A stretch of DNA of 64,000 bases. Origin: Macrostomum lignano. Its lineage: Eukaryota. Of this stretch, positions 1,142 to 60,000 are shown one piece after another (position 1 is the stretch's first letter; every line of letters begins with the position of its first letter). Location: the NCBI GenBank assembly GCA_002269645.1, contig NIVC01003085.1, forward strand, positions 1 to 64,000. The letters are read 5' to 3'. A program made the translations under genes and the position numbers. Below the pieces are notes generated by a model. That model had not been told where the DNA came from, ran no database searches, and worked only from the letters and a program-made list of their open reading frames with translations.

Positions 1142-3689
1142 CAAAGAATGACATCAATACACAGAGCCAGGGATCCTCCTGTGACAGCTGAGAGACGTGG
1201 CTCTGCTAGCTACATACCTCCACCCCCAAGCAAGAAAGATGTATTGCAGCAAAAGGTAGGTTTGCATAGGTGTGATAAAATACTTGTTTTCAGGTTTTGT
1301 GTCTACTGGGAATTGAAGATATTATCTAATGAAGAATTGGGATATTATCTACTGAGGAATTGGGATATTATCTACTGAGGAATTGGGATATTATCTACTG
1401 GGGAATTGAAGATATTATCTAATGAAGAATTGGGATATTATCTACTGAGGAATTGGGGATATTATCTACTGAGGAATTGGGATATTATCTACTGAGGAAT
1501 TGGGGATATTATCTACTGAGGAATTGGGGATATTATCTACTGAGGAATTGGGATATTATCTACTGAGGAATTGGGATATTATCTACTGAGGAATTGGGAT
1601 ATTATCTACTGAGGAATTGGGATATTATCTAATGAAGAATTGGGATATTATCTACTGAGGAATTGGGATATTATCTACTGAGGAATTGGGGTATTATCTA
1701 CTGAGGAATTGGGGATATTATCTACTGAGGAATTGGGGATATTATCTACTGAGGAATTGGGATATTATCTACTGAGGAATTGGGATATTATCTACTGAGG
1801 AATTGGGGTATTATCTACTGAGGAATTGGGGATATTATCTACTGAGGAATTGGGGATATTATCTACTGAGGAATTGGGATATTATCTACTGAGGAATTGG
1901 GATATTATCTACTGAGGAATTGGGGATATTATCTACTGAGGAATTGGGGGTATTATCTACTGAGGAATTGGGGATATTATCTACTGAGGAATTGGGGGTA
2001 TTATCTACTGATGAATTGGGATATTATCTACTGAGGAATTGGGATATTATCTACTGAGGAATTGGGGGTATTATCTACTGATGAATTGGGATATTATCTA
2101 CTGAGGAATTGGGATATTATCTACTGAGGAATTGGGATATTATCTACTGAGGAATTGGGATATTATCTACTGAGGAATTGGGGGTATTATCTACTGGGGA
2201 AATCAGATATTGCTTGAGAAGAAACTGTCATTCTGACTCATTTAGACTACAGATACATTAAATTTTTTTATCCTCTACTGCCTTCGTCCCGCTCAGTAGA
2301 AAAGCGCGCAAATTGTAACTATTATTTAACTCACATTTAAAAACGCCCCTCCCCTAAGGTCGCCGGCGCCGCCACGCCTGGAGACGCCAGGGCGGCCAGT
2401 CTGGACCGCTCGGCGCTACCGCCGCCGCAGCCGAAGCCAAAACCGAAGCCCAAACTGAAGCCGGGCTCCTCTAGCGCCGACGCCGACGAAGCACCTAGAG
2501 TTGTCGACGCTGCCGAGGCCGGCGGCGGAGTCCGGCGCCACTCGGACGAAGACGCCGATCCGGGGCCGGCGGCGGCGGCACTGACCAGTCTGGGCGCGGC
2601 AGCGGCGGCGGCTGGGCCCACTTCTCGGACGTCGACTCGGACACTGGCCTCATCAGCGGCTCGGCCGCTGGCCGCGAGCCTTTGGCCGGCTCGACCGCTG
2701 CCGCAGCATCCACTGGCGGCCGCGGCGCCTCTCGCCGACGTCATCGTCGGGCCGCCTCGTCGTCCTCGGCAGAAGGCGGCGTCGGGGGATCCAAAAACGA
2801 CGACGGCGACGATGTCGATGATGACGATTCGACGTCGGATTCGGACGACTCCGACAGCCAGGCTGGCGACGCGCCCGACGACCGGCACAAGTACGTTGAG
2901 GGCAACGGCGGCGGCGCTGGCGGCTTCGAGGATGAAGAGGACAGCTCGGATCCGCTGGCCATGACCCGCGAGCAGCGCGAGTACTACGCCAACCAATTCC
3001 TCACCCTGTGCCCCAGCCTCACCGGCCGCATCACCGGCCCAGTGGCCAAGCAGTTCTTTGAGAAGTCCCGCCTGCCCCCGCCCGAGCTGTCCCGCATCTG
3101 GGCCCTGTCCGATCGCGACATGGACGGCCAGCTCAACCTGGCCGAGTTCTCCACCGCGATGCACCTGGTCGTGCTGAGGCGCAACAATGTGCCGATACCC
3201 GACAGGCTGCCCCCTGTTGCTGCCGGCTACGAGCCGCTGTCCGACCAGGACGAGGCTTCGCCGCCTCCGACGATGCCGCCGCCACCGCCAATTCACCAGC
3301 AGCAGCCGCCGCCGGAGCCGTCAGTCTTTGGCGGAATTCCTCCAACCGGTGTTGGCGTGCTTCATCCGACCCCTAGGAAACCGACAGCGCATCAGCAGCA
3401 GCATCTCCTGCAACAGCACGCCGACCCGTCCGCTCCGACTGTGCCGCCACGAGCTGCCAGCTATCAGCTGGCGTCCTCCGCTGCTGCCGCCGCCGCTGCT
3501 GCCGACGCCGCCGCTGTTGCCTCCGGCCAGCCGCCCAATCGGGAACGCCTGCTAGCGGCGGTGAAGGCTCAGAAAGAGAAGAATCACACCCTGGTTAGGC
3601 TCAACAATGAACTGGCTGTCGAGCTCAAGGAGGTCACCGAGCAAAGGATTGCCTTGGAATTGGAGTTGGAACGGCTGAAACCGCTTTAA
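1142..3689 (+). CDS. REPS: REPS1/REPS2-like (RalBP1-associated EH-domain protein), 3' part. Exons 1142-1255 and 2359-3689, with an apparent 1-nt frameshift near 2562-2565
   Basis: EH domain (MTREQREYYANQF...AKQFFEKSRLPPPELSRIWALSDRDMDGQLNLAEFSTAMHLVV) and C-terminal coiled coil (KNHTLVRLNNELAVELKEVTEQRIALELELERLKPL*) match my recollection of REPS1/2. Phase-0 sites: ccag|CAA at 1142, AAG|gtagg at 1255, cctaag|GTC at 2359. N-terminal exons would lie outside the window. Confidence 0.85.
1307..2200. repeat. Intronic minisatellite, 23-25 bp unit GAGGAATTGGG(G)ATATTATCTACT
   Basis: Tandem copies read directly. Confidence 0.97.
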
Positions 3690-5392: not shown

Positions 5393-6449
5393 TATGCCAT
5401 TCTACTCGTAATAGTACTAAAAGTACTTTAGTATGGACAATTCCCGTTCCATACTCCAGTCCAAATTTTAGATTGTTAACTGATTTCTGACGGGCGGGCT
5501 AACAAACTAACCATTGATTTTTTGTGCAGTTGAAATTTATTTTGTTTTGCAATCTACTGAATCACACGTTCTCAGTAGTCACTATTGCACTCGATTCAAC
5601 TAATAATCAAATGCCCGACACTCAAATCTCCCAGCTACAGTCACCGTACTCTCTTCCTTCTCTGTGTGTTTCATAATAATATTTCCAAGTGTAAGATTTT
5701 GGACCAGGATAAATTCAGATTCTCGATTGTACGCGGCGGTAGCGGCTTTCGCACCTTATTTATTATCCTCATCAATGCAAGCACTCTCTCGTTAAGATTT
5801 AATTGAACTTATTACATGCTTATTATATTACAGTACTATAGTACAAATATATACATATAGAGCTCAGATAGAGACTATAATTATAACCCTTGGAATGTTG
5901 CGCAGACCTGCGCGAAGTCTGTGCAAAGCTTACTTTAGGCGTTCACAAATAGCGTAACTGTTATTACTTTGACAAACTTTTATTTATTTTGATTCTTCGT
6001 AATAAGAAACACTATCTGCTCTACTTATGAGTAGCACCCATTGTATGGGATGCTTGACCTTCAAGGCTTTCTGTATCAGCGTGTTGTCGCCAATGCTGCT
6101 TCTTAGTGAGTTACAATTTAACGCAAGTGGAACTCTACATCTAGCAGAAATTGTAAAATTTCTAGCTCTTTGCAAGGATATCTTCAACTTTAAAAGATTG
6201 ACTAGCAATCTAGTGCCCCCTTCGTGGCGCGCAATATGCAAGGAGCAAAAATCATTCATGGAAAACAGTTAAAAAAGCACATTTTCTTAAGAATTCTTCA
6301 GTTTTAAAATCACCTTATTCGAGTAAAATTGTCACGGTCAAAGTCAAAGATGTTTGTTGGCTATGAAGTTTTTTTTTAAAAATTAACAAAGACGACAAAA
6401 TGAAGCTTTCACAATGATAACAGACATTCCCCTAAACAGAAAACATCCC

Positions 6450-7232
6450 AAGACAGCAAGCATCCCCCAGCTGATAGCAAGCATGCCGCAGATAACAAGT
6501 ATCTCCCAGATAGCAAGCACCGCCCTCCAAGAGTAAGCAACCGCATATCATCCCCTGATAACAAGCACCCCCCCAGATAGCAAGCATCCCCTGATAGCAA
6601 GCATTCCCAAGATAGCAAGCATTCCCAGATAGCAAGCATCCCTGATAACAAGCACCCCCCCCCCCAGATAGCAAGCATTCCCCAGATAGCAAGCATCCCC
6701 CAGATAGCAAGCATCCCCTGATAGCAAGCATCCCCTGATAGCAAGCATTCCCAAGATAGCAAGCATTCCCCAGATAGCAAGCATCCCTGATAACAAGCAC
6801 CCCCCCCCCAGATAGCAAGCATTCCCCAGATAGCAAGCATCCCGCAGATAACAAGTATCTCCCAGATAGCAAGCACCGCCCTCCAAGAGTAAGCAACCGC
6901 ATATCATCCCCTGATAACAAGCATCCCCCAGATAGCAAGCATCCCCCCAGATAGCATCCCCCAGATAGCAAGCATCCCCTGATAACAAGCATCCCCCAGA
7001 TAGCAAGCATCCCCCAGATAGCATCCCCCAGATAGCAAGCATCCCCTGATAACAAGCATCCCCAGACAGCAAGCATCCCCCAGACAGCAAGCATCCCCCG
7101 ATAGCAAGCATCCCCTGATAGCAAGCATCCCCCTGATAGCAAGCATCCCCCAGATAGCTAGCATCCCCCAGATAGCATCCCCAGATAGCAAGCATCCCCC
7201 AGATAGCAAGCATCCCCCAGATAGCAAGCATC
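6450..7232. repeat. GATAGCAAGCATCCCCCA (17-19 bp) satellite, left part
   Basis: Read directly; resumes at 13193. Confidence 0.97.
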
Positions 7233-7965
7233 ACTACGTAATGCGCAGATAGAGCAGGGTTTTCAGGCAGATTTGACGCAAAAAACGCAAATTATACTAC
7301 TATCTGAAAATGAAGTAAGTAGTATACAAAAACGCTATCCTAAGCGTGATGTGGCAATATGTAGTTGTAATAATCCATGTGCTCATATTAATACCATGTA
7401 CATTAATCCCTATCTATCTCAAATTGTACATTAATTCCATGTACATTAATCCCTATCCCAAATTGTCTATCCCCAATTCTATATGTACATGTGCATTAAT
7501 CTACAGTGTCATCCCCAGCGCGCGCGCACCAACATTACATGTACAATGCTACATGTACACAGAGGCGAGAATTACTAATCTCATCTACTACCAAATGAGT
7601 CAACTAACCGTGTAGCGTACATCATGTATAAGTATTTACAATGAAGATATATTTACATTTAATCAGTAGCATATTACAGGAAATAATTTATGTACAGCAT
7701 TACCAGCAAATAGAATATACAGAAAATTTTACATTGTTTTTCATTAATTTTCTTTTCATAAATAATTTTAAACAAGTTTGACACGCAAAATATGTACAAT
7801 AGATTTTTACATTGGCAATTTCGCTGCATACAATACAAAAATGCTTTATGTACATTTGTATAGTAGTATGTAACTCTTCATTAATTTAACATGCAAAATA
7901 TGTACAACAATAAATAGATTTTACTCAGTCAAATTTAACAAGATATTTATTAAGCAAGGGCCACA

Positions 7966-10854
7966 TTATTTATAACCATAAGGCCTGCTGCAGGCCCCGT
8001 ACACGCGCTTCGTCAGGACGCGCTGAAACGTCTTGTCCATATTGATTGTGTGTATGGTACAAGACGCCTTGTCGCGCCTAAACTGAAGCTGCGGCAGCTG
8101 CAGGGAGCCGCCGTGTAGTAGGGCACTGCGCAATTCATCGCTGCGCTCCCGAATCTCCGGAGTCAGGCGGATGCCCTTGCACTTCAGGACCTGACTCCGG
8201 GCACCGGCCGCATCCTCGACAATGTAAGTGTAGAGTTTGGGCCCCCCACTTACAAAGTCGGTCATCCGGCTGCCTGCGGGCACCTCATCGGTCCACATTC
8301 CGAGGCTCGTGCCATGGGGCGGCTCCCATTGGCCCTCGGAATGCCGGTAAACGACCCTGTGTGGGAGAGAAAACGAGATAATTGCTAACTATTTACATGT
8401 AATCAATTCTAAAATAATTTTCCCAATGCAATACTTACGAGTCAGTGTCGCAGTAAATGGCCCGTTCGCCGAGCCCCTCCAATGCCTCATACAGGCGCAG
8501 CCGGGCCTGAGTGGTCGTAAAGACCCCGATTGGCACATTGGAGTACCGGAACGGCCGCTGATTAAAATAGCGGTGCCGGTACTCTAGCAGCATAAACTCG
8601 CTGCCAATCGGTTCGCAGGCCTTGACTTTGAGGTTGGGGTCGGTCAGCCGGGCGAGCCAGTCCTCGTAGCTGGATACAATTTCTGTCGATGTCAGGTCAT
8701 CACGCTGACAAAATTTGCCCCAGAGCCTGTGTGTTGTGAAAAGAAGTGCTACTGTTAGTAGAAGAAGAAAATCATTTAAAATACAAAAATTTATGAATAC
8801 TTACGAATTCAAAAAGATTTTCGCTACAAAGCGAAGTCCTGGGTTGGGCTCGACCTTGTCCAGCGTGACGCCCTCCTTGGCGTAAAAATCGGCAATGTAG
8901 GCGGCCTTGTCTTCATCCGACATGCCGGGGGAACCGCTCGACTCAGCCTTCAGCTTGAGAAAGGTGCTGACATAGTCACTGAACAGACCGGTCCGCTTCT
9001 CTGTCCAGTAGGCCAGCGCGTGCACCGCCTGCAGCCGGTAGCCCAACTGGAAGGCCTTCCGCAGCTCCGGCGTTGCCCAGGTACCAGTCAGTGCCCGCTG
9101 CTGGTCAGAGTGGTCGCAGCACTCGCCGCACTGCTGCTCCATACAGGTGCGGCAAAGCCCAAAAAAGAGCTTCTTTTGCACCCTGTAGGGCAGCAGCGGA
9201 ATGTGCAAATCTGACGGCGGCAGCACTGTCACCTTGGCAATGCCAAAGTAGCTAGCCAGCGCGTCAGAATCGAGCACTTGCGGCGTCGGATGTTGCACCG
9301 GGTGGCCAATCGGGTATGGGTCTTTCGACTGCACCGTCGGGTACAGAGAGACCTGCCAGTTGAAATAAAGCATTATTTTTTTTCATAAACTGTATTTTTT
9401 GCAAAATATTCTACTATATTAGTAGTATCGCTACTCACCACATCCCGATATTTGAGAGTCTCAGTCTCGCTGGCCACAGCATGCGGGATAAAGCACTCTA
9501 CGCGGCCACCGTAGAGCGCATCCTCCATCTTGAGCGGAGCGCGCAGATGTGCAGTTGCGGCGATAAAGTCGGCCTGCGACGCCAATACAGTGTCGTACTC
9601 ATGCTCCCAAATGACTCGAACACTGTAATTGTGCCGCTCCAACTCGCGAGTGAACCACTCAGTCTCGTGGCGAATATGGCTCAGAGGCTGCCGTTTGAGC
9701 GGGTGGACGACATCCTGATCGGGCATACACTGCTCGCAGCCATGGTAGAAACAGCCATGAAACTGCAAAACAGTGTTGCTCGCCTCATCGAAGCCGTCCA
9801 CCTTGCGGCCGAGAATGACAGCCTCGCCGCCAGTCGAGTCGCAGGTTCGCAGCCGCCCGCCAAATTCGGTGGCATTCAAATAGGCCAGCCACTTGCGCGC
9901 CTTGAACGACTGCTGGTCGGCCTGCCGGGCAATCACGCCGACCGAGTTGGGCTCCATAAACCGGGTGGTGAAAACGGCCATTGCCAAACTGGCAATCGTA
10001 TTGGCCTGAACAAATGGTTCCAGGCCGTCGCAAATTTCACCAATTATTGCCCTGTACTTGATGCAGCCCTCGCGAAGCAGGACTGTGTCGCTCAAACAAT
10101 AATCGAGATATTCCCGATTAAAGTTGAACAACTCGCCCTGTCGCGAGGCTAGCCAAGCACAGATTGAGTCATAGTCCTTGTTCGCTTTGCCGCCATAATA
10201 TTCAATAGCCGGGTAGGGGCCAACGTAGTTCCAATTAGCCGGCTTGTTAAACTCGTGGGGAAAGGTCCCCTTGGCCAGCTTTGTGTTAGCGAGCCCCAGA
10301 GCTTTGGGGAATTGCGCAAGCGGGATTGGTATAAAATTTAATGAATCTTTAAATACCAATTTATCCACCGTCATGCTCATTAGCCGGCTGCCCTGGAACA
10401 GTACTTGTGGCCGCTTCTTGGCCAGGCCGTTGAGTAGAGCGCCAAGCAGTAGGAACGAATCGTAGCCTGATGCATTGTGCGCTACAACAATGGCGCCGCC
10501 TCGGAAAGCTGTGCTCAGCCAGGTGAAAAACGCATTCAGCGAGGCCGGGCCCACAGCCACAAAATCGGCCATTTGGCAGGCGCAGTCTGAGTGGCTGACG
10601 CAATTGGAGAATTCCTCCCCCAGATCGCGGCCAGTCAGACAATTGGCGGCGCTATGCAGGCCATTGCAGAGGCGGCAAGTCTCGCGCGGAAACGCCCGGC
10701 CGGAGCAGGTCTCGCAGCACGTGACGGCAGTCACCAGGTGCACGTGATGCTGCTTCTCCTCGTCCGTGTATGTTTCCGTATCGTAGAACACGTACGGCAT
10801 AGTCGAAGCTTTCACTTTGGGAGCCTTGACGGAGCACAAATGCGGGCATGTCAA
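7966..10854 (-). CDS. polB: Protein-primed family B DNA polymerase (5'-truncated). Exons 10854-9439, 9352-8805, 8726-8439, 8356-7966
   Basis: Exo I (FYDTET), Exo II (AHNASGYD), Exo III (YCLSDTVLL), Vsr-like insert (VDGFD...FHGCFYHGC...IWEHE), YGGRVE, motif A (YRDV|VSLYP), motif B (KIFLNS|LWGKF), motif C (YCDTDS|VVY) and GPKLY. Exon lengths 1416+548+288+391=2643 nt, in frame. Confidence 0.93.
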
Positions 10855-10892
10855 GTGCCCACTGTGTAAACAGTACGACGAGGCCGGCTCGC

Positions 10893-12459
10893 AGATGGAG
10901 GATGCGCTCTACGGTGGCCGCGTAGAGTGCTTTATCCCGCATGCTGTGGCCAGCGAGACTGAGACTCTCAAATATCGGGATGTGGTGAGTAGCGATACTA
11001 CTAATATAGTAGAATATTTTGCAAAAAATACAGTTTATGAAAAAAAAATAATGCTTTATTTCAACTGGCAGGTCTCTCTGTACCCGACGGTGCAGTCGAA
11101 AGACCCATACCCGATTGGCCACCCGGTGCAACATCCGACGCCGCAAGTGCTCGATTCTGACGCGCTGGCTAGCTACTTTGGCATTGCCAAGGTGACAGTG
11201 CTGCCGCCGTCAGATTTGCACATTCCGCTGCTGCCCTACAGGGTGCAAAAGAAGCTCTTTTTTGGGCTTTGCCGCACCTGTATGGAGCAGCAGTGCGGCG
11301 AGTGCTGCGACCACTCTGACCAGCAGCGGGCACTGACTGGTACCTGGGCAACGCCGGAGCTGCGGAAGGCCTTCCAGTTGGGCTACCGGCTGCAGGCGGT
11401 GCACGCGCTGGCCTACTGGACAGAGAAGCGGACCGGTCTGTTCAGTGACTATGTCAGCACCTTTCTCAAGCTGAAGGCTGAGTCGAGCGGTTCCCCCGGC
11501 ATGTCGGATGAAGACAAGGCCGCCTACATTGCCGATTTTTACGCCAAGGAGGGCGTCACGCTGGACAAGGTCGAGCCCAACCCAGGACTTCGCTTTGTAG
11601 CGAAAATCTTTTTGAATTCGTAAGTATTCATAAATTTTTGTATTTTAAATGATTTTCTTCTTCTACTAACAGTAGCACTTCTTTTCACAACACACAGGCT
11701 CTGGGGCAAATTTTGTCAGCGTGATGACCTGACATCGACAGAAATTGTATCCAGCTACGAGGACTGGCTCGCCCGGCTGACCGACCCCAACCTCAAAGTC
11801 AAGGCCTGCGAACCGATTGGCAGCGAGTTTATGCTGCTAGAGTACCGGCACCGCTATTTTAATCAGCGGCCGTTCCGGTACTCCAATGTGCCAATCGGGG
11901 TCTTTACGACCACTCAGGCCCGGCTGCGCCTGTATGAGGCATTGGAGGGGCTCGGCGAACGGGCCATTTACTGCGACACTGACTCGTAAGTATTGCATTG
12001 GGAAAATTATTTTAGAATTGATTACATGTAAATAGTTAGCAATTATCTCGTTTTCTCTCCCACACAGGGTCGTTTACCGGCATTCCGAGGGCCAATGGGA
12101 GCCGCCCCATGGCACGAGCCTCGGAATGTGGACCGATGAGGTGCCCGCAGGCAGCCGGATGACCGACTTTGTAAGTGGGGGGGCCCAAACTCTACACTTA
12201 CATTGTCGAGGATGCGGCCGGTGCCCGGAGTCAGGTCCTGAAGTGCAAGGGCATCCGCCTGACTCCGGAGATTCGGGAGCGCAGCGATGAATTGCGCAGT
12301 GCCCTACTACACGGCGGCTCCCTGCAGCTGCCGCAGCTTCAGTTTAGGCGCGACAAGGCGTCTTGTACCATACACACAATCAATATGGACAAGACGTTTC
12401 AGCGCGTCCTGACGAAGCGCGTGTACGGGGCCTGCAGCAGGCCTTATGGTTATAAATAA
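10893..12459 (+). pseudogene. polB: Mirror copy of the pPolB polymerase-domain exons (introns 10985-11071, 11620-11697, 11986-12067); lacks exonuclease; G7 versus G6 run at ~12177-12183 shifts the last exon
   Basis: Reverse complement of the left arm; same splice sites; AATAAA at 12474-12479. Confidence 0.88.
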
Positions 12460-13192
12460 TGTGGCCCTTGCTTAATAAATATCTTGTTAAATTTGACTGA
12501 GTAAAATCTATTTATTGTTGTACATATTTTGCATGTTAAATTAATGAAGAGTTACATACTACTATACAAATGTACATAAAGCATTTTTGTATTGTATGCA
12601 GCGAAATTGCCAATGTAAAAATCTATTGTACATATTTTGCGTGTCAAACTTGTTTAAAATTATTTATGAAAAGAAAATTAATGAAAAACAATGTAAAATT
12701 TTCTGTATATTCTATTTGCTGGTAATGCTGTACATAAATTATTTCCTGTAATATGCTACTGATTAAATGTAAATATATCTTCATTGTAAATACTTATACA
12801 TGATGTACGCTACACGGTTAGTTGACTCATTTGGTAGTAGATGAGATTAGTAATTCTCGCCTCTGTGTACATGTAGCATTGTACATGTAATGTTGGTGCG
12901 CGCGCGCTGGGGATGACACTGTAGATTAATGCACATGTACATATAGAATTGGGGATAGACAATTTGGGATAGGGATTAATGTACATGGAATTAATGTACA
13001 ATTTGAGATAGATAGGGATTAATGTACATGGTATTAATATGAGCACATGGATTATTACAACTACATATTGCCACATCACGCTTAGGATAGCGTTTTTGTA
13101 TACTACTTACTTCATTTTCAGATAGTAGTATAATTTGCGTTTTTTGCGTCAAATCTGCCTGAAAACCCTGCTCTATCTGCGCATTACGTAGT

Positions 13193-13500
13193 AGCATCCC
13201 CCCAGATAGCATCCCCCAGATAACAAGCATCCCCCAGATAGCAAGCATCCCCCCAGATAGCATCCCCCAGATAGCAAGCATCCCCTGATAACAAGCATCC
13301 CCCAGACAGCAAGCATCCCCCAGACAGCAAGCATCCCCCAGATAGCAAGCATCCCCTGATAGCAAGCATCCCCCAGACAGCAAGCATCCCCCAGACAGCA
13401 AGCATCCCCCAGATAGCAAGCATCCCCTGATAGCAAGCATCCCGGCCCCTGATAGCAAGCATCCCCCCTGATAGCAAGCATCCCCCCAGATAGCAAGCAT
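13193..13500. repeat. GATAGCAAGCATCCCCCA satellite, right part
   Basis: Read directly. Confidence 0.97.
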
Positions 13501-14329
13501 CTTTGGATAGAAAGAATCCCATACATGTAGCTAGTACCCCTCTCTCCCAAATAGCAAGTACACCCCCCCCCCTAGAGAGCCTAAGATATCAGCATCCCCA
13601 GTGAGCTTTGGCAATCAGACTCCCTTGTAAGCCATGGCTTAAACCCTAACTCTCCCTTTGACCTGCCTTTGGCTTGGTGCACCAACAACTTCCAATTGAT
13701 CCTTGGCATCTCAGCAACCGGCCTCCATGAGTCAGCCCAGGTGGCACGAAGTACTTTAGAAGTACTTAACTAAGTCTTATCGCAGCAAAATTACATTTTA
13801 TTACTGTGTAGTGAATTAAATATTTTTAAGCAAAATTAATAGAGATTTAAGTGACACGCGCACCTGAGAACAAGAAGAATACGAGCTATGAATGGACCTA
13901 CAATTTGCCAGAGGGAGTAGTTTTGGAGTGCAAGCAAGCTTCGTAAAAGTCAAGGTACGAGTGGTACATGGACCTGATCGGTGGCTGTAGAGTGTAGACT
14001 GTTTGGCTGTCAAATGCATAAAAATGGCCGTTCAACAAACTGTCCTGTCAACCTCCCGAGAATTTCGCTTTAATATGTCTCATAGTTTAATGTGAGTTCT
14101 TAGAGTAGAGGTTTGCGTTTTTTTCTTGTGAGATTTTAATTTTGACCAATTAGGCTTACCTTAAGTCCCACAATCACTGCTAATCGCAAAGAACTTTTGG
14201 AACTCTTAATTTTAGCTTTAACTTCGAATGCATTATGTTCTTGACTTTGTCCTGCGAATTATTATAAATATCTAATGATAGCAACACTTACTTTATTGGA
14301 TTCCCTTTCCATATAAACTATCAGAGGGT

Positions 14330-17775: not shown

Positions 17776-18724
17776 ACTGCTTTCGGGAGGCTGAGAAGAT
17801 TTGCTTCCGTCGTGCTCAAGCAGAAGGCTGTGCAAAGGGCCATCTCAAATAGCTTACCTTCGGATGTGCTCTCAAACATACATGTACATGCGCTGAGGCG
17901 CAACCCCCTGATTTACAGAGGCAGTGCGACTTAGCTATAATATAAAAAAACCCAAGTAAAAACGCATTTTGGGTAAACGGCAGGAGTAACTATTTATTAT
18001 TACATTAAGGCTAAATGCCTCGTCATCTAATTAGTGCCACGTCTTTTTCGGTGGGAATTTTTGCGACTTACATGTACTCGTACCTTGGCTTGGGCCCCTC
18101 GCCAGCCTTAACAACAGTAGTTCCAGAGAAACAAAGAATGGAAGGTGAAGCATCTCCGAGAATAAACTTTTAAAAAGATTGAAGTTTGAAAGCTTAAAAA
18201 AGCAAGTTTGAAATAATTGACTAAGAATTTCCCACCCTCCGTTTCTACCCACTCTCATGGCATTTGCGGGATGCCATAATTGTCAATGTCTCAATTGTAA
18301 GTTTTAATTGTCATTTCATTGTTTAATTTACTGCCATTGAGTCGAAGTCTATTTCGACTACTGCACAGTTCTTGTTAAATTAAGTTTTCGACGCTTTGAA
18401 ATTTCGACCTTATGAAGTCCCTTGCTAAAGTTTTCGATATTGTGAAATAATTTACTTTTCGACGTGAAATTTCGACCCTGTGAAAGCACCCCAACTTTTT
18501 GCTGATTACTCGCGTTTTCAAATTACATTTAATCGATTTTTCTATATGTACAATTATATGCAATATATGCAATTCATAGTATGATTAGCCCAGGCAATTC
18601 ACATGTCAGATATGGCGCGTAAAAGGGCCTTCTCGACTCTGTCATACCAATGATGTCATCCACAACATCTTTACTTTCCAATTTACAAAGTATGCATAGC
18701 CTGTTGCATTTGAGACAAAAAATT

Positions 18725-20110
18725 GTCAGGATTGAGGTGAGACAAATTTAAACATTGTGTCAGGATTGAGATGGACAAATTAAACATTGTGTCAGGATGG
18801 AGGTTGAGACAAATAAAACATTGTCAGGATTGAAGTGAGACAAATTAAACATTGTGTCAGGATGGAGGTTGAGACAAATTAAACATTGTCAGGATGGAGG
18901 TGAGAGCCAAATTAAACATTGTCAGGATGGAGGTTGAGATAAATTAAACATTGTCAGGATGGAGGTGAGAGAAATTAAACATTGTCAGGATGGAGGTTGA
19001 GATAAATTAAACATTGTCAGGATGGAGGTGAGAGAAATTAAACATTGTCAGGATTGAAGTGAGACAAATTAAACATTGTCAGGATGGAGGTGAGAGACAA
19101 ATTAAACATTGTCAGGATGGAGGTAGAGATAAATTAAACATTGTCAGGATGGAGGTGAGAGAAATTAAACATTGTCAGGATTGAAGTGAGACAAATTAAA
19201 CATTGTGTCAGGATGGAGGTTGAGACAAATAAAACATTGTGTCAGGATGGAGGTTGAGACAAATTAAACATTGTCAGGATTGAAGTGAGACAAATTAAAC
19301 ATTGTCAGGATTGAAGTGAGACAAATTAAACATTGTGTCAGGATGGAGGTGAGAGACAAATTAAACATTGTCAGGATGGAGGTTGAGATAAATTAAACAT
19401 TGTCAGGATGGAGGTGAGAGACAAATTAAACATTGTCAGGATGGAGGTTGAGACAAATTAAACATTGTCAGGATGGAGGTGAGAGACAAATTAAACATTG
19501 TCAGGATGGAGGTTGAGACAAATTAAACATTGTCAGGATGGAGGTTGAGATAAATTAAACATTGTCAGGATGGAGGTTGAGATAAATTAAACATTGTCAG
19601 GATGGAGGTTGAGATAAATTAAACATTGTCAGGATTGAAGTGAGACAAATTAAACATTGTCAGGGACTCAGGATGGAGGTGAGAGACAAATAAAACAGTG
19701 TCAGGATTGAGGTGGACAAATTAAACATTGTGTCAGGATTGAAGTGAGACAAATTAAACAGTGTCAGGATGGAGGTTGAGATAAATTAAACATTGTCAGG
19801 ATGGAGGTGAGAGACAAATTAAACATTGTCAGGATGGAGGTTGAGATAAATTAAACATTGTCAGGATGGAGGTGAGAGAAATTAAACATTGTCAGGATTG
19901 AAGTGAGACAAATTAAACATTGTGTCAGGATGGAGGTGAGACAAATAAAACAGTGTCAGGATGGAGGTTGAGATAAATTAAACATTGTCAGGATGGAGGT
20001 GAGAGAAATTAAACATTGTCAGGATTGAAGTGAGACAAATTAAACATTGTGTCAGGATGGAGGTGAGACAAATAAAACAGTGTCAGGATTGAGGTGGACA
20101 AATTAAACAT
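18725..20110. repeat. Minisatellite, ~33 bp unit GTCAGGATGGAGGTTGAGACAAATTAAACATT
   Basis: Read directly. Confidence 0.97.
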
Positions 20111-26899: not shown

Positions 26900-27170
26900 G
26901 GGATGCTTGCTATTTAGGGATTCTTGCTATCTGCAGGATGCTTGCTATCTGGGTGGATGCTTCTATAATATCTGGGGGGTGCTTGCTATCTGCAGGATGC
27001 TTCTATAATATCTGGGGGGTGCTTGCTATCTGCAGAATGCTTGCTATCTGGGTGGATGCTTGCTATCTGGGTGGATGCTTCTATAATATCTGGGGGGTGC
27101 TTGCTAATCTGCAGATGCTTGCTATCTGTGGTGATTCTTGCTATAAGCATTAGAGGATGCTTGCTATCTG
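26900..27170. repeat. GGATGCTTGCTATC satellite (reverse orientation of 6450-7232)
   Basis: Read directly. Confidence 0.9.
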
Positions 27171-28399
27171 CGATTGTTCACTTTTGGAGGGGGTTGCTTG
27201 CTGTCTTGGGAATATTTTCTATTTAGGGAAACAATATTTTGTTGACTGTTTGTTAACTTTAGAGAAAAAGTGATTTTTTAATTTTGCAAACATCTTAGTC
27301 CGTGACAATTTTACACGAATAAGGTGATTTTTAAAATGTGAAGAAGGAATTAGTGTTTAAGAAAATGTGTTTTTTTATTGTTTTCCATGAACTATTTTTG
27401 CTCCTTTCTTATTGGGCGCCCCGAAGGGGGGTCGCACTAGATTGCTAGTGTTAAGCTAAAAGTCTTTTTTGTACATATTACATGCAGCATTTTTATATAT
27501 TTGCTACATGCTTCAATGAATTAACAATTAAAATTTAACTTGTATTAGATAATAAAAGATACTCATTTTTCTATTAACAAACTGAATACATATGGCAATG
27601 CCTTAGTTTTCAACATTGGAATGAACAGCTATTTATAGCCTTTAGATATGCTATACAATAAGTGCAAATAAGCTTTTGGTTCAATATCTGCTTATAAGGT
27701 AGGTGTAATAATTTATTAGTTATAAGATACAGACATAGTTTCAAATAACTTATATTATATTGCCTTGCAGATGTATTAAGTTTTTATATATAATTTTAGA
27801 TTGGCAATTAGGGAATACAAAATCTTAAGTTCTGCCAATCTTGGGATTTTTAGGATTGGGATATCCCAGACTTTGAAAATCCTAAGATTATTGGGATCAG
27901 GATATCCCAGACTTTTCCTATCCCAGGATCTCAACAAATTGGGCTGGGATCATAGGATTGAGAAAGTGTCTAATTTTTGTTGGTGCAATTTTGGCTTATG
28001 AAGCCATCTAATCTGATTTCAAATGGCTTTTAAGCATATAAATAGAACAGAATAAAATATTTTGCAAACAAGAAACTGATAGTGAGCTCTAAATTAGTGT
28101 GATATATAGACTAGCATATAGACAAGCTTTTTTATATGCCAGTATTAGCTCAGGAAAATCACACCTGGTTGTGATATAACTTGGGGAATGATAGCTTAGA
28201 CCTATGGCATGAGATACTAATAACAAGATAGGAGATCAGACCTCACACTCCTAGGGGCACCCACCCTAGATGGAGAATTGGTAGCTTTGGTTATAGTCTA
28301 ATAGCAAGGTTTAACAAATTGGTTGAAATATATTTTGTGACAAAGTTGTATAATATCTATGTAAAAAATGTATATTCACAATAATGGCAAAAACACACT

Positions 28400-33250: not shown

Positions 33251-36200
33251 ATGTCGACATCGACGCCGTCACCCACTCCGAGCACTTCGCTGACCATGCG
33301 GCAGATCCAGCAGGCCACTCAGTGAGTGCCGGTCTTTTTGCGAACACTGTGCAATGCACCTGTGCCATTTCCATTTCTTGTTGCTATGCTGTTTTTTTAC
33401 GCTCCGTAGCTGCTCAAATACCAATGTGCTGCTCACACACCAGTGTAGCTGCTCACACACCAGTGTAGCTGCTCACACACCACTGTAGCTGCTCACACAG
33501 CAGTGTAGCTGCTCACACACCAGTGTAGCTGCTCACACACCACTGTAGCTGCTCACACACCACTGTAGCTGCTCACACACCACTGTAGCTGCTCACACAC
33601 CAGTGTAGCTGCTCACACACCACTGTAGCTGCTCACACACCACTGTAGCTGCTCACACACCAGTGTAGCTGCTCACACACCACTGTAGCTGCTCACACAC
33701 CACTGTAGCTGTTCACACACCAGTGTAGCTGCTCACACAGCAGTGTAGCTGCTCACACACCAGTGTAGCTGCTCACACACCAGTGTAGCTGCTCACACAC
33801 CAGTGTAGCTGCTCACACAGCAGTGTAGCTGCTCACACAGCAGTGTAGCTGCTCACACACCACTGTAGCTGCTCACACACCACTGTAGCTGCTCACACAC
33901 CACTGTAGCTGCTCACACACTCCCCAATGTAGCTGCTCACACACCAGTGTAGCTGCTCACACACCACTGTAGCTGCTCACACACCACTGTAGCTGCTCAC
34001 ACACCAGTGTAGCTGCTCACACACCAGTGTAGCTGCTCACACACCAGTGTAGCTGCTCACACACCAGTTTAGCTACTCACACACCAGTGTAGCTGCTCAC
34101 ACACCAATGTAGCTACTCACACACCAGTGTAGCTGCTCACACACCAGTGTAGCTGCTCACACACCACTGTAGCTGCTCACACACCAGTGTAGCTGCTCAC
34201 ACACCAGTGTAGCTGCTCACACACCACTGTAGCTGCTCACACACCACTGTAGCTGCTCACACACCACTGTAGCTGCTCACACACTCCCCAATGTAGCTGC
34301 TCACACACCAGTGTAGCTGCTCACACACCAGTGTAGCTGCTCACACACCACTGTAGCTGCTCACACACCAGTGTAGCTGCTCACACACCAGTGTAGCTGC
34401 TCACACACCAGTTTAGCTACTCACACACCAGTGTAGCTGCTCACACACCAATGTAGCTACTCACACACCAGTGTAGCTGCTCACACACCAGTGTAGCTGC
34501 TCACACACCACTGTAGCTGCTCACACACCAGTGTAGCTGCTCACACACCAGTGTAGCTGCTCACACACCACTGTAGCTGCTCACACACTCCCCAATGTAG
34601 CTGCTCACACAGCAGTGTAGCTGCTCACACACCAGTGTAGCTGCTCACACACCACTGTAGCTGCTCACACACCAGTGTAGCTGCTCACACACCACTGTAG
34701 CTGCTCACACACCACTGTAGCTGCTCACACACCAGTGTAGCTGCTCACACACCAGTGTAGCTGCTCACACAGCAGTGTAGCTGCTCACACACCAGTTTAG
34801 CTACTCACACACCAGTGTAGCTGCTCACACACCAATGTAGCTACTCACACACCAGTGTAGCTGCTCACACACCAGTGTAGCTGCTCACACACCACTGTAG
34901 CTGCTCACACACCAGTGTAGCTGCTCACACACCAGTGTAGCTGCTCACACACCACTGTAGCTGCTCACACACCACTGTAGCTGCTCACACACCACTGTAG
35001 CTGCTCACACACTCCCCAATGTAGCTGCTCACACACCAGTGTAGCTGCTCACACACCACTGTAGCTGCTCACACACCACTGTAGCTGCTCACACACCAGT
35101 GTAGCTGCTCACACACCAGTGTAGCTGCTCACACACCAGTTTAGCTACTCACACACCAGTGTAGCTGCTCACACACCAATGTAGCTACTCACACACCAGT
35201 GTAGCTGCTCACACACCAGTGTAGCTGCTCACACACCACTGTAGCTGCTCACACACCAGTGTAGCTGCTCACACACCAGTGTAGCTGCTCACACACCACT
35301 GTAGCTGCTCACACACTCCCCAATGTAGCTGCTCACACAGCAGTGTAGCTGCTCACACACCACTGTAGCTGCTCACACACCACTGTAGCTGCTCACACAC
35401 CAGTGTAGCTGCTCACACACCAGTGTAGCTGCTCACACCTGTGCCATTGCAGTATTGTATATATTATAAAAGTATTTCTATATGTTGAAATTTTGAGCAA
35501 ATGTCGAAACCATTGAGAAGACTATTTTCTTTTGAGACTGATTCACAATGGGGGGCTCAGACTCATGTCAGATTGTATTATCTTTTGGCCTACAAAATGT
35601 ACATCAGACAAAGAGAATACATTTTTCCTGAGCATATGGTTCCGACAGTTGAATATGCTCTCTTTGCTTCACATTTTTTGCACACGCGAAGGCTCAGTTC
35701 CGCCGTTTGCAGCTATGAATAAACGAGGCTGAGAAGGACAATAGAAATTGAATACAGAATGCAGGACTACACAGGTAGCTGCGTATCAGGAACATTGACA
35801 TGGAGGTTGTAGAGAGACAAGGTGGAGTTCAACAGGAAGAGATTGGGAGTGAATGAGAAAATGAGAATAGAGATAAGGGAGCTGAGGTATGAAGAAGAGA
35901 GGTGGAAATGAGAATAGAGACAATTAGGGAGATCAGATATGGAGAAGAGAGATGAAGATGAGAATATGCATAAGGGGAATGAGATATGGAGATGAGAGAT
36001 AGATGGAAATGAGAATAGAGATAAGGGAGTCGTGATATGGAGAAGAGAGATGGAACTGAGAATAGATATAAGTGAGCTGAGAAATGGAGAAGAGAAATGA
36101 AGATGAGAGTAGAGATTAGAGGAATGAGATAGGAGATAAATATGTAAAGAAGAGTAGAGATAAGGGGAATGAGATAGGAGATAAATATGTAAAGAAGAGT

Positions 36201-55000: not shown

Positions 55001-57020
55001 AACAGTATTTTTTTATAAATGACTTCAATAATCAATGTTGGATACCAGTCTGTTAATAAGCATTAATCTATTGATAAGCATTAATAAGCATTAAGATTTT
55101 TATTAACAAACTGCCATTAAGATTTTTTGAATTAATAGATTAACAAATTAGCATTAATAATTTTGTGAGTTAATAACAAACTCATTGTTAATGTTAATGG
55201 CAATGTCAATGACCAAAGATGCAAATAAGGAACAAAAATATAAATCTGAAGAGAAGTTACAACATTACAAATATATTTGAATTTACCTAAATGCCTAATT
55301 AATCTCTTTGTTTATAATAAAGATTATGCAAATTTAATAACTTCTTATTATGAATATAATAACTTCTATAATGAATTAAAATTGTGAACTCTACTGCTTG
55401 TATGTGAGCATCAATTGCTTTTATTCACTTCTTTCCCAATCTTTCGTAACTTTCTGCTATGTTTGCTAATGCTACTGAAACTACCTTATTCATATTTTAT
55501 TATTGACTATTTAGCTTTCAAGTTTCAAATAGATAAGTTAATTCTTTTACCATATGTTTACTTTTAGTAGTATTATATATACAAGTTTTTTAAATTAATA
55601 TTTATTACTTTTTTTAGCTTGTAAATTGCTTGGATGACCTCTGTGTTTTACTAAAAAGATGGAAAAGCAAAGGTAGTGCATTATGAAGTTTGTTTTAGAA
55701 AAAGTGCAACATTTCTATATTTTCTATGTTAACTTTAATGGATTAATGCTTATTAACTCTTAACAAAACTAAGAGTTAATAAGTTAAGATTTTTTGTTTT
55801 AATGCTAACACTTTTTCCATTAATGGAAGTTAAGATTTTCATTAATAGTGCCCAACACTCAATAATTTTTTATTTATTGATTTTTTATTTTTATATTGAA
55901 TGATTTATGAATTATGATTTATCTACTATTTATTTAATGGATAGGCCTAATTGATAGACTGATTAATAAAATATAAACAAAAAATTAATCTGTAGTTTAG
56001 AAAGATATTTAGAAGATATTTAGATGTTTTTATACTTTTAATATAGTCTATATAGATTTTCCAAAATGGTCTTTTGCCAAAATGGCTTTTACCAAAGTGG
56101 TCTTTCACTAAAATGGTTAGCACCCTTTTAATAGACAAGTTAGACAAGTATAGCAGATAAACTAGCAATAGAGAAAATGACTATCAACCATTATAAAATA
56201 CCTTTCTATATCCTATTTGATTTTTTCTTTATTAAAATTAGTGCAAAGCTATTAGCAGTCCACTAATATTCTATTTTGTCTGCACTAGCTAAAATTTGGT
56301 AAAAAATTGTTTAAAATCTTATGGCTATGTCTATTGGTAAGATAAAAGAATCAATAAGTGAGTAGTGTCTAATAACTTGTTATCTTAGTTATTCAACTAT
56401 TAAATAATCGAAAAAACAACAGTAATTGACAAAATAGAATGTGATTTGATAACTATAAGTGGAGGGTGCCAATAGTAATTTAATAAATGAACCAAATAAT
56501 CATCAATAATAGACTGTAGTGTCTAATAAATATCTTAACTGAAATAAATTATTATGCAACTGATTGTTTTGCATTTGTTTATTTTATCTTATTTATTCTA
56601 GTAAAATTTTCTTTATTCAAAACAATGCTGAGTATGATTTTTTGACTTAAAAACCTAGGAGAATCAAAAATGTCTAAGAAGCTTAAATTATACAGCTAGA
56701 CATGTTAGATATTGTTGCTTTTGCAAAAAGCTGGGTATTGAAATATGGTATTGGAATTAGTGTATTAACAATATTCAAAATTTGGGTATTCGAGTTTAAG
56801 GTATTGGGTAATTACTTTTTTATAGATTACATGTATTGAAGTATCACTTTTAACTAACTGTTAGCTAAAGAACTGTTCATATTGACAATGTGAAACTTTA
56901 GGCTTATAAAAGGGGCTAGTGGGAGTTTCCAAAACCAGCAAAATTGTGCCCACAATAATTTTGCTGCAGCCAATAGCAACAGCAACAGTCGCGGCCTCCA
57001 GTGTCGCAGCAGCAGCAGGC

Positions 57021-60000
57021 GATGCCTTTCGGGCTGCACAGTACCGCCACCACTGCCGCCGTCAGTGCCGCACTGTGCATGCAGTTCGCACAGTTGCTAT
57101 GCACAGACTCCCGGCAGGCTACGGCTTCAGCATCAGCGGCCAGCGTCCGTGCGTTGTTAGCGCAGTTGTGCCTGGCAGCGCCGCGCAGCACGCCGGCCTG
57201 AAACCTGGCGATTACCTGCTGGGCGTCAATGGCCAGCCAGTTGATGGGGCTGAGCACGAGCGAGTGGCTGCATTGATTGGCGCCAGCGGCGACTCTCTGG
57301 CGCTTCAGGTTGTGTCAGTGAGTTGGTCAACTTTTGTAGGGAACGTAGAGGTTTTGATAATTCAGAGGGTCTAGGGAATTTAGCTTTAGCTGTTGGAATT
57401 TTGATGGTGTGAGCAATTTAAAGGGTGTAGGTAATTTAAAGCGTGTGGGGAATTCAAAGCGTGTGGGTGATTTAAAGGGTGTGGGGAATTTAAAGCGTGT
57501 GGAGAATTAAAGCGTGTGGGGAGTTTAAATAGGTATAGGGATGGGGAATTTAAGGATGTGGGGGAATTTAAAGCGTGTGGGGAGTTTAAAGGGGTAAAGG
57601 GGTGGGGAATTTAAAGGATGTGGGGAATTTATTGGGTGTGGGGAATTTGTAGGGTGTGGGGAATTTATAGGGTGTAGGGAAATTAAAGGCTGTGACTTAA
57701 AAAAAAATCAATGGCGGAACGGATTTTAGGGGCTGGGGGGAAGCTTCTAAGACGTAGGAAGCTTTTGGGCATTTGGGACTTTTTGAGAAAGTTGATGGCA
57801 TTGCAATATTTCGAGCTCAGTCTGAGGTTCAAAACAAGGCTCAGTCTGAGGTTCGAAGCCCACTGTTACTTTGGACTTGGCGGCCCTCATCAATATGACA
57901 ACAGAATTCGTGAGCACTACTCAGAGCGAGAACTCATTCTTAATCTGTGATGCCGAGCAGGCCGAGCCCAGCCTCCTAGGCGCCTGCTCAGACAATGATG
58001 AAGCGGAAATGCCGCATCAAAAGCTGGCACAGCAACAGGCGCCGCCTCCGCCACCACCGCGGCATCAGCACTGCGGCGCCATCGGGCCGGAGCAGCGCTA
58101 CGAAGACGCCGCCGCTGCCACTGCCCCGGCTCTGTCGGGCGAGCTGGCGGGCCGCTGGCTGGTCATCCACGTCGCCAGCCTGCAGCTGCCGGTCCCGGCG
58201 CCCGCCGACCGGCTGCGCGTCGTTCGCTCGGCGATCGCCAGCGCCCGCGCCGCGGCCCGCCTGCAGCCGTCGTCGCCCTCGGCCTCGCCGTCCTCACTAT
58301 CGCCGTCGTCTTCGACCTCGTCGACGAAGCCGACGCCGACTCCAGCAACTTCCGCGGCGGGCCAGCCGACCCTTCTGGAGGTGACGCCGCGCTCTGTCAG
58401 CCTCGCCGACGCCCGAGGCCGCTCGCTGCTCAGCCTGCCAGCAGACAGTCTGGCCTTCGTCTGCGCCTACAACGAGGACGCCCGCTACTTTGCTCTCCTC
58501 ACCGTCGCTGGCGCGGTGCACATCTTCCGGGTCAGCGGCCGCCTAGCCGATCATCGGCGCCGCGGTCACGCTCGATGGACGGCGGCGTTCGGATTGAACT
58601 GCCAGCCGGACGAGTCCGCTGGCTGCTGCACCCAGCTGCCTCAGGTGGCGGCTCCCATCGTGCACCGGCTGGTGCGCCTGTTCGCCGACAAGGAGGCCGC
58701 GGCGCCGCCCAGTCTGAGCTATCCGACCCCGCCGCCGTCTGGCCCGCCGGCTCTCAATCGACAGCAGCGCCAGCTTCGTCGACCGTCGGTTCCGATACAC
58801 GTCGCCGACTCTTCATCGGGCACCCTGACTGGCCTGGCGGCATCGTTGAACTCAACAGTCAGGACGCTGGCCTCTGGAGAAGTTGTTCAAGGGCAGCAGC
58901 AAAAGACGGATGTCGCTCCGTCGACGCGATGGACAACTGGACTCAGTGCGCTCTCTTGTGAGGTACAGATTTACGCTCGTACCTGTTATTATATTGGTGA
59001 CTGGGATTCCCCTAACTGGATTCCTCTAGCTGGGATTCTCCTAGCTATAATTCCCCTAATTGGATTCCCCGAACTGGGATTTTCCTAGCAGGGATTTCCC
59101 TAACTGGATTCCCCTAGCTGGGATTCTCCTAGCTGATATTCTCCTAGCTGGGATTCCCCTAGCTGGATTCCTCTAGCTGGATTCCCCTAGCTGGGATTCT
59201 CCTAACTGGAATTCCCCTAACTGAATTCCTCTAGCTGGGATTCCCCTAGCTGGGATTCCCCTAGCTGGAATTCCCCTAGCTGGGATTCTCCTAACAGGAT
59301 TCTCCTAACAGGATTCTCCTATCTGGGATTCCCCTAATTGGATTCCACTGTCAGGAATTTTCCTAACTGTGATTTCACTGACTGGGATTCTATTTAACTG
59401 GAGCTCCACTGACTTGAACTCCACTGAAGAAACCAAATCTTAGCTGACAGAATGATATGAGGTAGTGTTATTATTGTAAAGCGGAGAAAACTGCCGCTTT
59501 TTTTGCGCATCAGGCAGCAAGTGTCCAATGCCGAAGAGCTAGTTTCCCTCATAGCTGACCTTTTAACTAATATGTCTCACTTAAAAAGCAATTACAAATT
59601 AACGCTAGGTAACTAATTAAGTAAAGCCAGCGGCCTCGCCTCTCCATACCGCAGAATCTGGCCAGCAGCGCCTCCTCCGATGACGCCGAATCGCCGCCAA
59701 TCGTTGCCGACAATCAGCGCCGACGCAGCGGCGGCGACTTCGGCGTCGGTACGGGAATCGGCGCCAAATTCGTCCCGGCGCCGCCGCCGCTGCTGCGCCG
59801 CCGGCCCCAATCGGCGATGGCGTTCGGCTCCGGCGTCGTTGATGCGCCCGACGCCATCGACGATACAGCCGCCACTGGCGGTCCCTCCGACTGGTCGGCC
59901 GGGCTGGACCGCCTGCTGGCCGACCCGACTGGCGTCAAGCTGTTCGCCGAATTTCTGCGCGGCGAGTTCAGCGAAGAGAATGTCGCCTTCTGGCTGGCTG

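What the first reader, a model, noticed from the sequence alone, without database searches (positions are those of the whole stretch)
7233..13192. Integrated snap-back (copy-back) defective Maverick/Polinton genome
Seen: a 5,960-bp element with ~2.3-kb near-identical inverted arms and a true 6-bp duplication (GATAGCA[AGCATC]-element-[AGCATC]CCCCAG). It contains only one viral terminus, present twice, plus polB. Established: Mavericks have TIRs, 6-bp TSDs, pPolB and an RVE integrase, and strand-displacing linear DNA viruses can generate snap-back defective genomes. Inference: both ends derive from the same (polB-side) end, giving two origins and two integrase sites. It would have been made during protein-primed replication and then integrated by a helper's integrase, making it a parasite-of-a-parasite class distinct from simple internal-deletion derivatives.
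Basis: partly seen in the sequence, partly recalled or inferred. Interest (0 to 1): 0.92.

Follow-up and report, generated by a model that had tools for sequence, protein, structure and literature searches.

The report
Fold-back Maverick remnant in flatworm satellite
A 6-kb piece of a virus-like transposon (Maverick/Polinton) in a Macrostomum-type flatworm genome carries the same viral end twice, in mirror image; its inner junctions look like a DNA-copying enzyme that turned back on itself, so it is a rare structural trace of how these elements are copied.

Summary
Window 7233-13192 is a 5,960-bp element. Its arms (7233-9530 and 10893-13192) are inverted copies with no substitutions and only two single-base homopolymer length differences. 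It interrupts an 18-bp satellite and is flanked by a direct AGCATC duplication. It encodes only a protein-primed family-B polymerase (PF03175), which has three canonical introns. The closest relatives are Macrostomum lignano gene models. A 35%-identical relative lies beside an rve/chromo integrase in a Maverick-like gene block.

The centre is not a plain snap-back. On the + strand the order is rc(C)-rc(B)-A-C. A is the 58-nt polB stretch that precedes B in all relatives, but here it is inverted relative to B. The turn-round shares 10 nt (10835-10844), and the right half lacks B (about 1.3 kb).

This fits a nascent strand, started at the polB-side terminus, that switched to the complementary strand at a short interrupted inverted repeat and then jumped again.

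The parent, any helper and any other copies could not be examined.

I rate it a new variant of a known kind, of moderate to good interest.

The parts
6447..7232 (.). Left flank: host 18-bp satellite array (unit CCCCAGATAGCAAGCATC)
7227..7232 (+). Left copy of the 6-bp direct duplication AGCATC
7233..9530 (-). Left arm (segment C plus terminus), 2,298 nt; mirror image of the right arm
7233..7965 (-). Left terminal non-coding region. It is A+T-rich, starts ACTACGTAATGCGCAG, and has two pairs of subterminal direct repeats (7387-7414/7430-7457 and 7777-7799/7885-7907)
7966..10842 (-). Left polB copy (one part). Four exons: 10842-9439, 9352-8805, 8726-8439, 8356-7966. Three GT-AG introns of 86, 78 and 82 nt. 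876 codons are open to the stop. It is 5'-truncated (lacks the roughly 480-residue N-terminal extension of relatives) and has no stops or frameshifts
9531..10834 (-). Segment B: single-copy polB stretch (exonuclease part and a Cys/His-rich insert), contiguous with the left arm
10835..10844 (.). Ten nucleotides (CACAAATGCG) shared by the end of rc(B) and the start of A: the strand-switch junction
10835..10892 (+). Segment A: 58 nt encoding HKCGHVKCPLCKQYDEAGS. In relatives this stretch lies directly N-terminal to B on the same strand; here it is on the opposite strand to B
10893..13192 (+). Right arm (segment C plus terminus), 2,300 nt
10835..12459 (+). Right polB copy (one part), broken: 5'-truncated, one large internal deletion (all of B) and one frameshift
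12460..13192 (+). Right terminal non-coding region, mirror of 7233-7965
13193..13198 (+). Right copy of the 6-bp direct duplication AGCATC
13193..13501 (.). Right flank: continuation of the same satellite in the same orientation

Best explanation
This is a non-autonomous, fold-back derivative of a Maverick/Polinton resident in a Macrostomum-type flatworm genome. Both ends are the same parental terminus, the one downstream of polB. Shown: the layout rc(C)-rc(B)-A-C, the 10-nt overlap at the rc(B)/A junction, the loss of B in the right half, the identical arms, the 6-bp duplication and the satellite target. Inferred: a DNA strand started at that terminus and was copied inward through C and B. 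Its 3' end then paired with a 10-nt inverted match about 45 nt ahead on the complementary strand and copied back outward. After 58 nt, near the point where it had left the first template, it jumped again to the start of C and ran to the end. That gave a linear molecule with two identical termini. I favour this having happened on a free, protein-primed, strand-displacing Maverick genome, with the product then inserted by an integrase supplied in trans, which made the AGCATC duplication. The element has no integrase or capsid genes. Its better polB copy lacks the N-terminal extension, so it could not act alone.
For: Arms have 0 substitutions over 2.3 kb, while other family members differ by 5-17% at protein level. 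That fits arms born from one molecule. A and B are contiguous on one strand in at least 14 M. lignano polB models and in L001, so rc(B)/A is a true inversion junction. Ten shared nucleotides sit at that junction. The orientation of A is what a nascent strand growing inward from the terminus would give. Self-priming by a resected broken end would give the opposite orientation. The two junctions lie 58 nt apart, which suggests one compound event. The inverted duplication stops exactly at the termini, and the flanks are co-oriented satellite with a 6-bp duplication, the size reported for Mavericks. polB is of Maverick type by its neighbours in L001.
Against: There is a single copy, with no parent, helper or second fold-back copy in the window or in the collections I could reach. 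No Macrostomum integrase was found among the best 120 relatives of a Maverick integrase. Read support for the assembly is unknown. Arm-to-arm gene conversion could keep the arms identical, so youth is not proven. The three wobble positions of the 10-nt overlap on the parental A side are inferred from protein only. The termini (ACTACG//CGTAGT) are not one of the three vertebrate end motifs. Repair synthesis on a resident full-length copy predicts the same final structure.
Confidence: 0.5

Rival explanations
1. In-place rearrangement. A full-length Maverick was inserted here and made the AGCATC duplication. Later a break inside it was repaired. The left TIR end invaded the inverted right TIR, copied C and B inward, and was joined by microhomology to the other broken end at A. 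The interior genes were lost. No free replication or second integration is needed.
For: It predicts the same rc(C)-rc(B)-A-C layout, the 10-nt overlap, the intact termini and the duplication. Junctions at short interrupted inverted repeats are typical of host fold-back inversions and origin-dependent inverted-repeat amplification (titles and abstracts: PMC7467729, PMC4689423, PMC10766183).
Against: It needs a prior full-length insertion, loss of more than 10 kb, 3.6 kb of repair synthesis and a further 1.3-kb loss. No remnant of any other Maverick gene remains in the element or the window. Host fold-back events normally duplicate flanking chromosome as well, which is not seen here.
Confidence: 0.27
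2. Assembly or library artefact: a chimeric palindromic long read, or a mis-join of two family copies lying in similar satellite.
For: The only differences between the arms are homopolymer lengths, typical of long-read consensus error. The locus is in satellite DNA, which is hard to assemble. No reads are available.
Against: A fold-back read would mirror the flanks too. Here both flanks carry the satellite in the same orientation and rejoin into a satellite variant that occurs elsewhere. The centre is asymmetric with two specific junctions, not a perfect palindrome. The element lies well inside the window.
Confidence: 0.08
3. Ordinary family architecture. The parent family simply has very long terminal inverted repeats that include the 3' part of polB, and this copy is a plain internal-deletion derivative.
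For: TIR lengths vary widely in Mavericks, from 46 to 1,447 bp in vertebrates. Two M. lignano models (P0020, P0025) start exactly at the first codon of the arm.
Against: The left inverted copy continues 1.3 kb past the arm through B and ends at a strand-switch junction inside a conserved coding stretch. Nineteen relatives read straight through the arm boundary. A 2.3-3.6-kb TIR exceeds the reported range.
Confidence: 0.07
4. Two independent truncated insertions, head to head or nested, at one site.
For: Repeated insertion into the same satellite is conceivable.
Against: One 6-bp duplication brackets the whole composite. There is no target DNA between the halves. The arms have no substitutions. 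The inner junction shows 10-nt overlap within polB.
Confidence: 0.03

Closest known systems
Maverick/Polinton elements and their non-autonomous derivatives
   Same: It has a protein-primed family-B polymerase with the long N-terminal extension seen in a Maverick-context relative, inverted ends, a 6-bp target duplication and an animal host.
   Different: It is 5.96 kb against 12.7-25 kb. It has no integrase, capsid, ATPase or protease genes. Its arms are 2.3 kb and made of coding sequence, against TIRs of 46-1,500 bp. Both ends come from one parental end. polB carries introns, whereas intact vertebrate elements are intronless. The end motif is different.
Snap-back or copy-back defective genomes of protein-primed linear replicons (adenovirus incomplete genomes; hairpin or palindromic derivatives of yeast killer linear plasmids). 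Recalled from my own knowledge, not checked with the tools.
   Same: One genome end is present twice in inverted orientation with an interior deletion, as expected from a strand switch during strand-displacement copying.
   Different: Those are free replicons seen in particles or cytoplasm. This one is integrated in a germline genome with a target duplication, and it has a second junction that makes the arms unequal.
Host fold-back inversions and origin-dependent inverted-repeat amplification (PMC7467729, PMC4689423, PMC10766183)
   Same: The inversion junction lies at a short interrupted inverted repeat, here 10 nt with a spacer of about 45 nt.
   Different: Those events duplicate chromosomal flanks or give triplications. 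Here the duplication ends exactly at the element's termini.
Copy-back defective viral genomes of negative-strand RNA viruses
   Same: The logic is the same: the polymerase leaves its template and copies back, giving complementary ends.
   Different: Those are RNA genomes copied by a different polymerase and are never integrated.
Foldback-type transposons with long inverted arms (from my own knowledge)
   Same: Long inverted arms make up most of the element.
   Different: Foldback arms are built of tandem subrepeats. Here the arms are unique polB coding sequence plus one viral terminus.

Membership tests
Maverick/Polinton | [quoted passage not shown] | tested here: met
   PF03175 matches at E 1e-15 and 8e-12. 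Relative P0018 lies in a block with an integrase. The N-terminal extension of the family is homologous to that of L001 polB, E 1e-14.
Maverick/Polinton | Retrovirus-like (rve) integrase encoded in the element | tested here: not met
   No rve match in the element's ORFs. The L001 integrase has no tblastn match anywhere in the window. At best it is therefore a non-autonomous derivative.
Maverick/Polinton | Capsid, packaging ATPase and protease genes | tested here: not met
   No L001 gene other than polB matches the window.
Maverick/Polinton | Terminal inverted repeats | tested here: met
   Present, but 2.3 kb against the reported 46-1,500 bp.
Maverick/Polinton | 6-bp target site duplication | tested here: met
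   AGCATC on both sides. The single-copy join is a satellite variant that occurs elsewhere; the doubled form is absent.
Maverick/Polinton | Conserved short-repeat end motif | tested here: inconclusive
   The ends are ACTACG//CGTAGT. The vertebrate types are (AGT)2//(ACT)2, (AG)3//(CT)3 and (AC)3A//T(GT)3. No flatworm reference is available.
Copy-back / snap-back defective genome | Both termini derive from the same end of the parent, in inverted orientation | tested here: met
Copy-back / snap-back defective genome | Inner junction compatible with a nascent strand switching to the complementary strand | tested here: met
   There is a 10-nt overlap, and A is inverted relative to B although the two are contiguous in relatives.
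Copy-back / snap-back defective genome | Generated on a free replicating genome and dependent on a helper | not testable with these tools
   No reads, no host genome and no parent are accessible.
Host fold-back inversion / ODIRA | Junction at a short interrupted inverted repeat | tested here: met
Host fold-back inversion / ODIRA | Inverted duplication extends into flanking chromosomal DNA | tested here: not met
   The flanks are co-oriented satellite, and the duplication ends at the termini.
Foldback transposons | Arms composed of tandem subrepeats | tested here: not met
   The arms are unique coding plus non-coding sequence.

The most novel reading that the evidence does not exclude
The element is a copy-back defective genome made while a Maverick replicated as a free linear DNA in the flatworm germline, and a helper's integrase then inserted it. 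It would be the first fossil to record both the replication mode and the trans-integration of these elements in an animal. It might also belong to a spreading family of double-terminus hyperparasites. Its 2.3-kb inverted arms could in addition yield hairpin RNA against the parent family.
Probability: 0.35. Interest if true: 0.75.

Novelty: new variant of a known kind. Interest (0 to 1): 0.55.

Why it matters
Protein-primed, strand-displacing replication of Mavericks/Polintons is inferred from their genes and has hardly been observed. A germline insertion whose anatomy is that of a copy-back product, with a resolvable strand-switch junction, would be a structural record of that replication and of integration in trans. 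It also supplies two exact junction sequences that can be counted in any Macrostomum data set. That makes the question 'do defective Maverick genomes spread?' directly answerable. If the origin was instead in place, the locus still documents how host repair dismantles a giant transposon.

Tried and rejected
- Exact-product look-ups of four window ORFs and of P0010 found nothing.
- Scans of the metagenome and prokaryote-genome collections for the terminus found nothing. No Macrostomum genome is held, so the parent and any other copies could not be sought.
- A search with a Maverick integrase (L001) showed no Macrostomum protein among the best 120 hits. The helper question stays open.
- The higher-order satellite alignment across the rejoined flanks supports continuity but cannot fix the duplication length. 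Scores were 149 with one AGCATC copy removed, 142 with both kept and 153 with 12 nt removed. The exact 20-mer test is the better evidence.
- I considered that the arm boundary coincides with a conserved ORF start in relatives. I rejected this: only P0020 and P0025 start there, and 19 relatives read through.
- I considered RNA splicing as the cause of the A/C junction. I rejected this: there is no GT donor at the end of A.
- I considered self-priming by a resected broken end. I rejected this: it predicts the opposite orientation of segment A.
- Pfam and PDB sequence searches of the Cys/His-rich polB insert gave nothing usable.
- The literature library holds no paper linking Mavericks/Polintons with copy-back or snap-back forms, and none on Macrostomum Mavericks.
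- L003 and the NCBI annotation of L004 gave no useful context for polB.
Full report
**1. Observation**

The repeat search finds three collinear inverted blocks that together pair 7233-9530 with 10893-13192. A global alignment of the left arm with the reverse complement of the right arm gives 2,298 against 2,300 nt. There are no substitutions and two single-base homopolymer length differences. The terminal 27-mer ACTACGTAATGCGCAGATAGAGCAGGG occurs only at the two ends, in opposite orientation, against 0 expected by chance.

The element interrupts an 18-bp satellite (CCCCAGATAGCAAGCATC) that runs in the same orientation on both sides, at 6447-7232 and 13193-13501. AGCATC abuts each terminus. With one copy of AGCATC the flanks join into GATAGCAAGCATCCCCCCAG. 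That 20-mer occurs three more times in these arrays, whereas AGCATCAGCATC never occurs in the window. A 236-nt stretch across the rejoined flanks aligns to uninterrupted array further left with 221 of 234 positions identical. That alignment cannot by itself fix the length of the duplication.

**2. Coding content and host**

The only family match is PF03175, the protein-primed polymerase B. On the minus strand the gene reads from 10842 to 7966 in four exons: 10842-9439, 9352-8805, 8726-8439 and 8356-7966. The three introns are 86, 78 and 82 nt and have GTGAGT or GTAAGT donors and CAG acceptors.

- **Left copy.** As it stands, it has 876 open codons and ends in a stop, with no internal stops or frameshifts. 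It lacks the roughly 480-residue N-terminal extension present in the M. lignano model P0010.
- **Right copy.** It is 5'-truncated, has one large internal deletion and has one frameshift. Of the two differences between the arms, one lies in an intron. The other lies in coding sequence and causes that frameshift.
- **Terminal region.** The last 733 nt of each arm (7233-7965 and its mirror) are A+T-rich and non-coding, with two pairs of short subterminal repeats.

Of the 20 hits to the polB query, 18 are UniRef models from Macrostomum lignano, including all of the top 17, with local identity up to 94-100%. The host is therefore that flatworm or a close relative. The rest of the window holds animal genes (EH, PDZ and RGS domains) and many minisatellites.

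**3. Is it Maverick-type?**

The nearest non-Macrostomum relative is P0018 (35% identity). It lies on a 1-Mb contig (L001) in a co-oriented block. The block holds:
- an N-terminal-extension ORF;
- polB in two ORFs;
- a 368-residue rve integrase with a weak chromodomain match;
- several unassigned ORFs;
- an ORF with a weak Pox_A32 ATPase match.

The L001 extension ORF is homologous to the N-terminal part of P0010 (E 1e-14). The integrase belongs to a very large family of about 360-residue rve/chromo proteins, and its nearest named member is in a coral. Other relatives of the polymerase part occur in fishes and a bivalve.

Published definitions give 12.7-25 kb, TIRs of 46-1,500 bp, 6-bp (5-8 bp) duplications, intronless genes in intact vertebrate elements, and short-repeat end motifs (PMC8097293 and PMC10748475). 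This element meets the polymerase, inverted-end and 6-bp criteria. It fails the integrase, capsid and size criteria. It is a derivative, not a full member.

**4. The centre**

This is the new point. On the plus strand, 10835-10891 encodes HKCGHVKCPLCKQYDEAGS, followed directly by the arm (…Q MEDALYGG…). On the minus strand the polB exon begins HLCSVKAPKVKASTMPYVFYDTET. In P0010 to P0012 the sequence reads …HKCGHVKCPLCKQYDEAGSHLCFVKAPKVKASTMPYVFYDTET…. The equivalent contiguity holds in at least 14 M. lignano models at about 50-94% identity and in L001.

I call the 58-nt stretch A, the single-copy 1.3 kb B, and the arm C. The parent reads A-B-C-terminus. The window's plus strand reads rc(C)-rc(B)-A-C. 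A is therefore inverted relative to B, to which it is normally joined.

- **First junction.** The 10 nt CACAAATGCG (10835-10844) belong both to the end of rc(B) and to the start of A. The parent therefore carried a 10-nt interrupted inverted repeat with a spacer of about 45 nt. Three wobble positions on the A side are known only from protein.
- **Second junction.** A-to-C at 10892/10893 has 1 nt of overlap and removes B from the right half. It lies 4 nt into what would have been the second arm of that small inverted repeat.

**5. Mechanism**

The orientation of A decides between two kinds of fold-back. A resected broken end that self-primes on its own hairpin would leave A in the same orientation as rc(B). 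The observed orientation needs a nascent strand that grew inward from the terminus (rc(C), rc(B)). Its 3' end then paired with the complementary strand at the start of A and copied back outward.

The second jump, after 58 nt, falls almost exactly where the strand had left its first template. I read the two junctions as one compound template-switch event; this is inference. The product has two identical termini.

Zero substitutions between the arms, in a family whose other members differ by 5-17% in protein, fits arms made from one molecule. Gene conversion between the arms could also keep them alike.

**6. Where it happened**

I see two routes to this structure.

- **(a) Free genome.** The switch occurred on a free, protein-primed, strand-displacing Maverick genome, and an integrase supplied in trans then inserted the product.
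- **(b) Resident copy.** The switch occurred in a resident full-length copy. After a break, the left TIR primed repair synthesis on the inverted right TIR, and the product was joined by microhomology at A.

Route (a) needs fewer steps. It also explains why no trace of other Maverick genes remains and why the duplication stops exactly at the termini. Route (b) cannot be excluded, because junctions at short interrupted inverted repeats are typical of host fold-back events. I put (a) at about 0.5 and (b) at about 0.27.

The remaining rivals are less likely:
- **Assembly artefact, about 0.08.** The flanks are co-oriented, not mirrored, and the centre is asymmetric.
- **Naturally very long TIRs, about 0.07.** The left copy runs 1.3 kb past the arm to a strand-switch junction, and 19 relatives read straight through the arm boundary.

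**7. Limits**

No Macrostomum genome, reads or full-length family member could be reached. The true TIR length, the presence of a helper and the existence of other fold-back copies are untested. One lead exists: two M. lignano models (P0020 and P0025) start exactly at the first codon of C. A copy with the A/C junction would produce such a model, but a gene finder that simply chose that ATG would do the same.

**8. Comparison and novelty**

In function it resembles copy-back or snap-back defective genomes of linear replicons. By descent it is a Maverick derivative. I found no report of such a form for Mavericks/Polintons in the paper library.

I rate it a new variant of a known kind, interest 0.55. 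The structure is real, precise and unusual. It rests on one locus, and the key claim of a free replicative origin followed by trans-integration is not yet separable from in-place repair.

Noticed in passing
window 8357-8438, 8727-8804, 9353-9438 (mirrored in the right arm): polB has three short canonical GT-AG introns. ORFs from other sources (P0023, P0024; 60-69% identity) coincide with exon 2, so the intron positions look conserved. Intact vertebrate Mavericks are reported to be intronless (PMC8097293).
   Followed up: partly
window 9502-9831 (-): A Cys/His-rich stretch of about 110 residues lies between the exonuclease and polymerase parts of polB. It has no Pfam match and no usable PDB sequence match, and its nature is unknown.
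   Followed up: partly
window 26918-27171: The satellite that hosts the element recurs here in the opposite orientation (unit GGATGCTTGCTATCTG).
   Followed up: no
window 1-64000: There are more than 20 different tandem arrays with units of 15-25 bp (for example 1302-2201, 18718-20110, 33406-35438). GC content swings between 23% and 68% from one kilobase to the next.
   Followed up: no
window 2682-3689 (+); 56919-57374 (+); 59817-60356 and 60801-61301 (+): Host coding pieces: an EH/EF-hand domain ORF, and PDZ plus RGS domain ORFs that look like exons of one PDZ-RGS gene.
   Followed up: no
L004 18462-19946 (-), Mercenaria mercenaria CM038772.1: About 7 kb from a related polB there is an ORF matching the herpesvirus glycoprotein B ectodomain (PF00606, E 1.4e-17). 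It may be a fusogen carried by a Maverick-like element.
   Followed up: no
L001 8532-21134: A Maverick-like block on a 1-Mb contig. polB is split into two same-frame ORFs separated by a 12-nt gap. There is an rve/chromo integrase and an ORF with a weak SLATT_1 match (13520-14110). The nearest named integrase relative is in the coral Oculina patagonica.
   Followed up: partly
proteins P0020, P0025 (M. lignano UniRef models): Both models begin exactly at the first codon of arm segment C (MEDALYGG…), which hints that other copies may carry the same inner boundary. P0027 and 18 other relatives read straight through it.
   Followed up: partly
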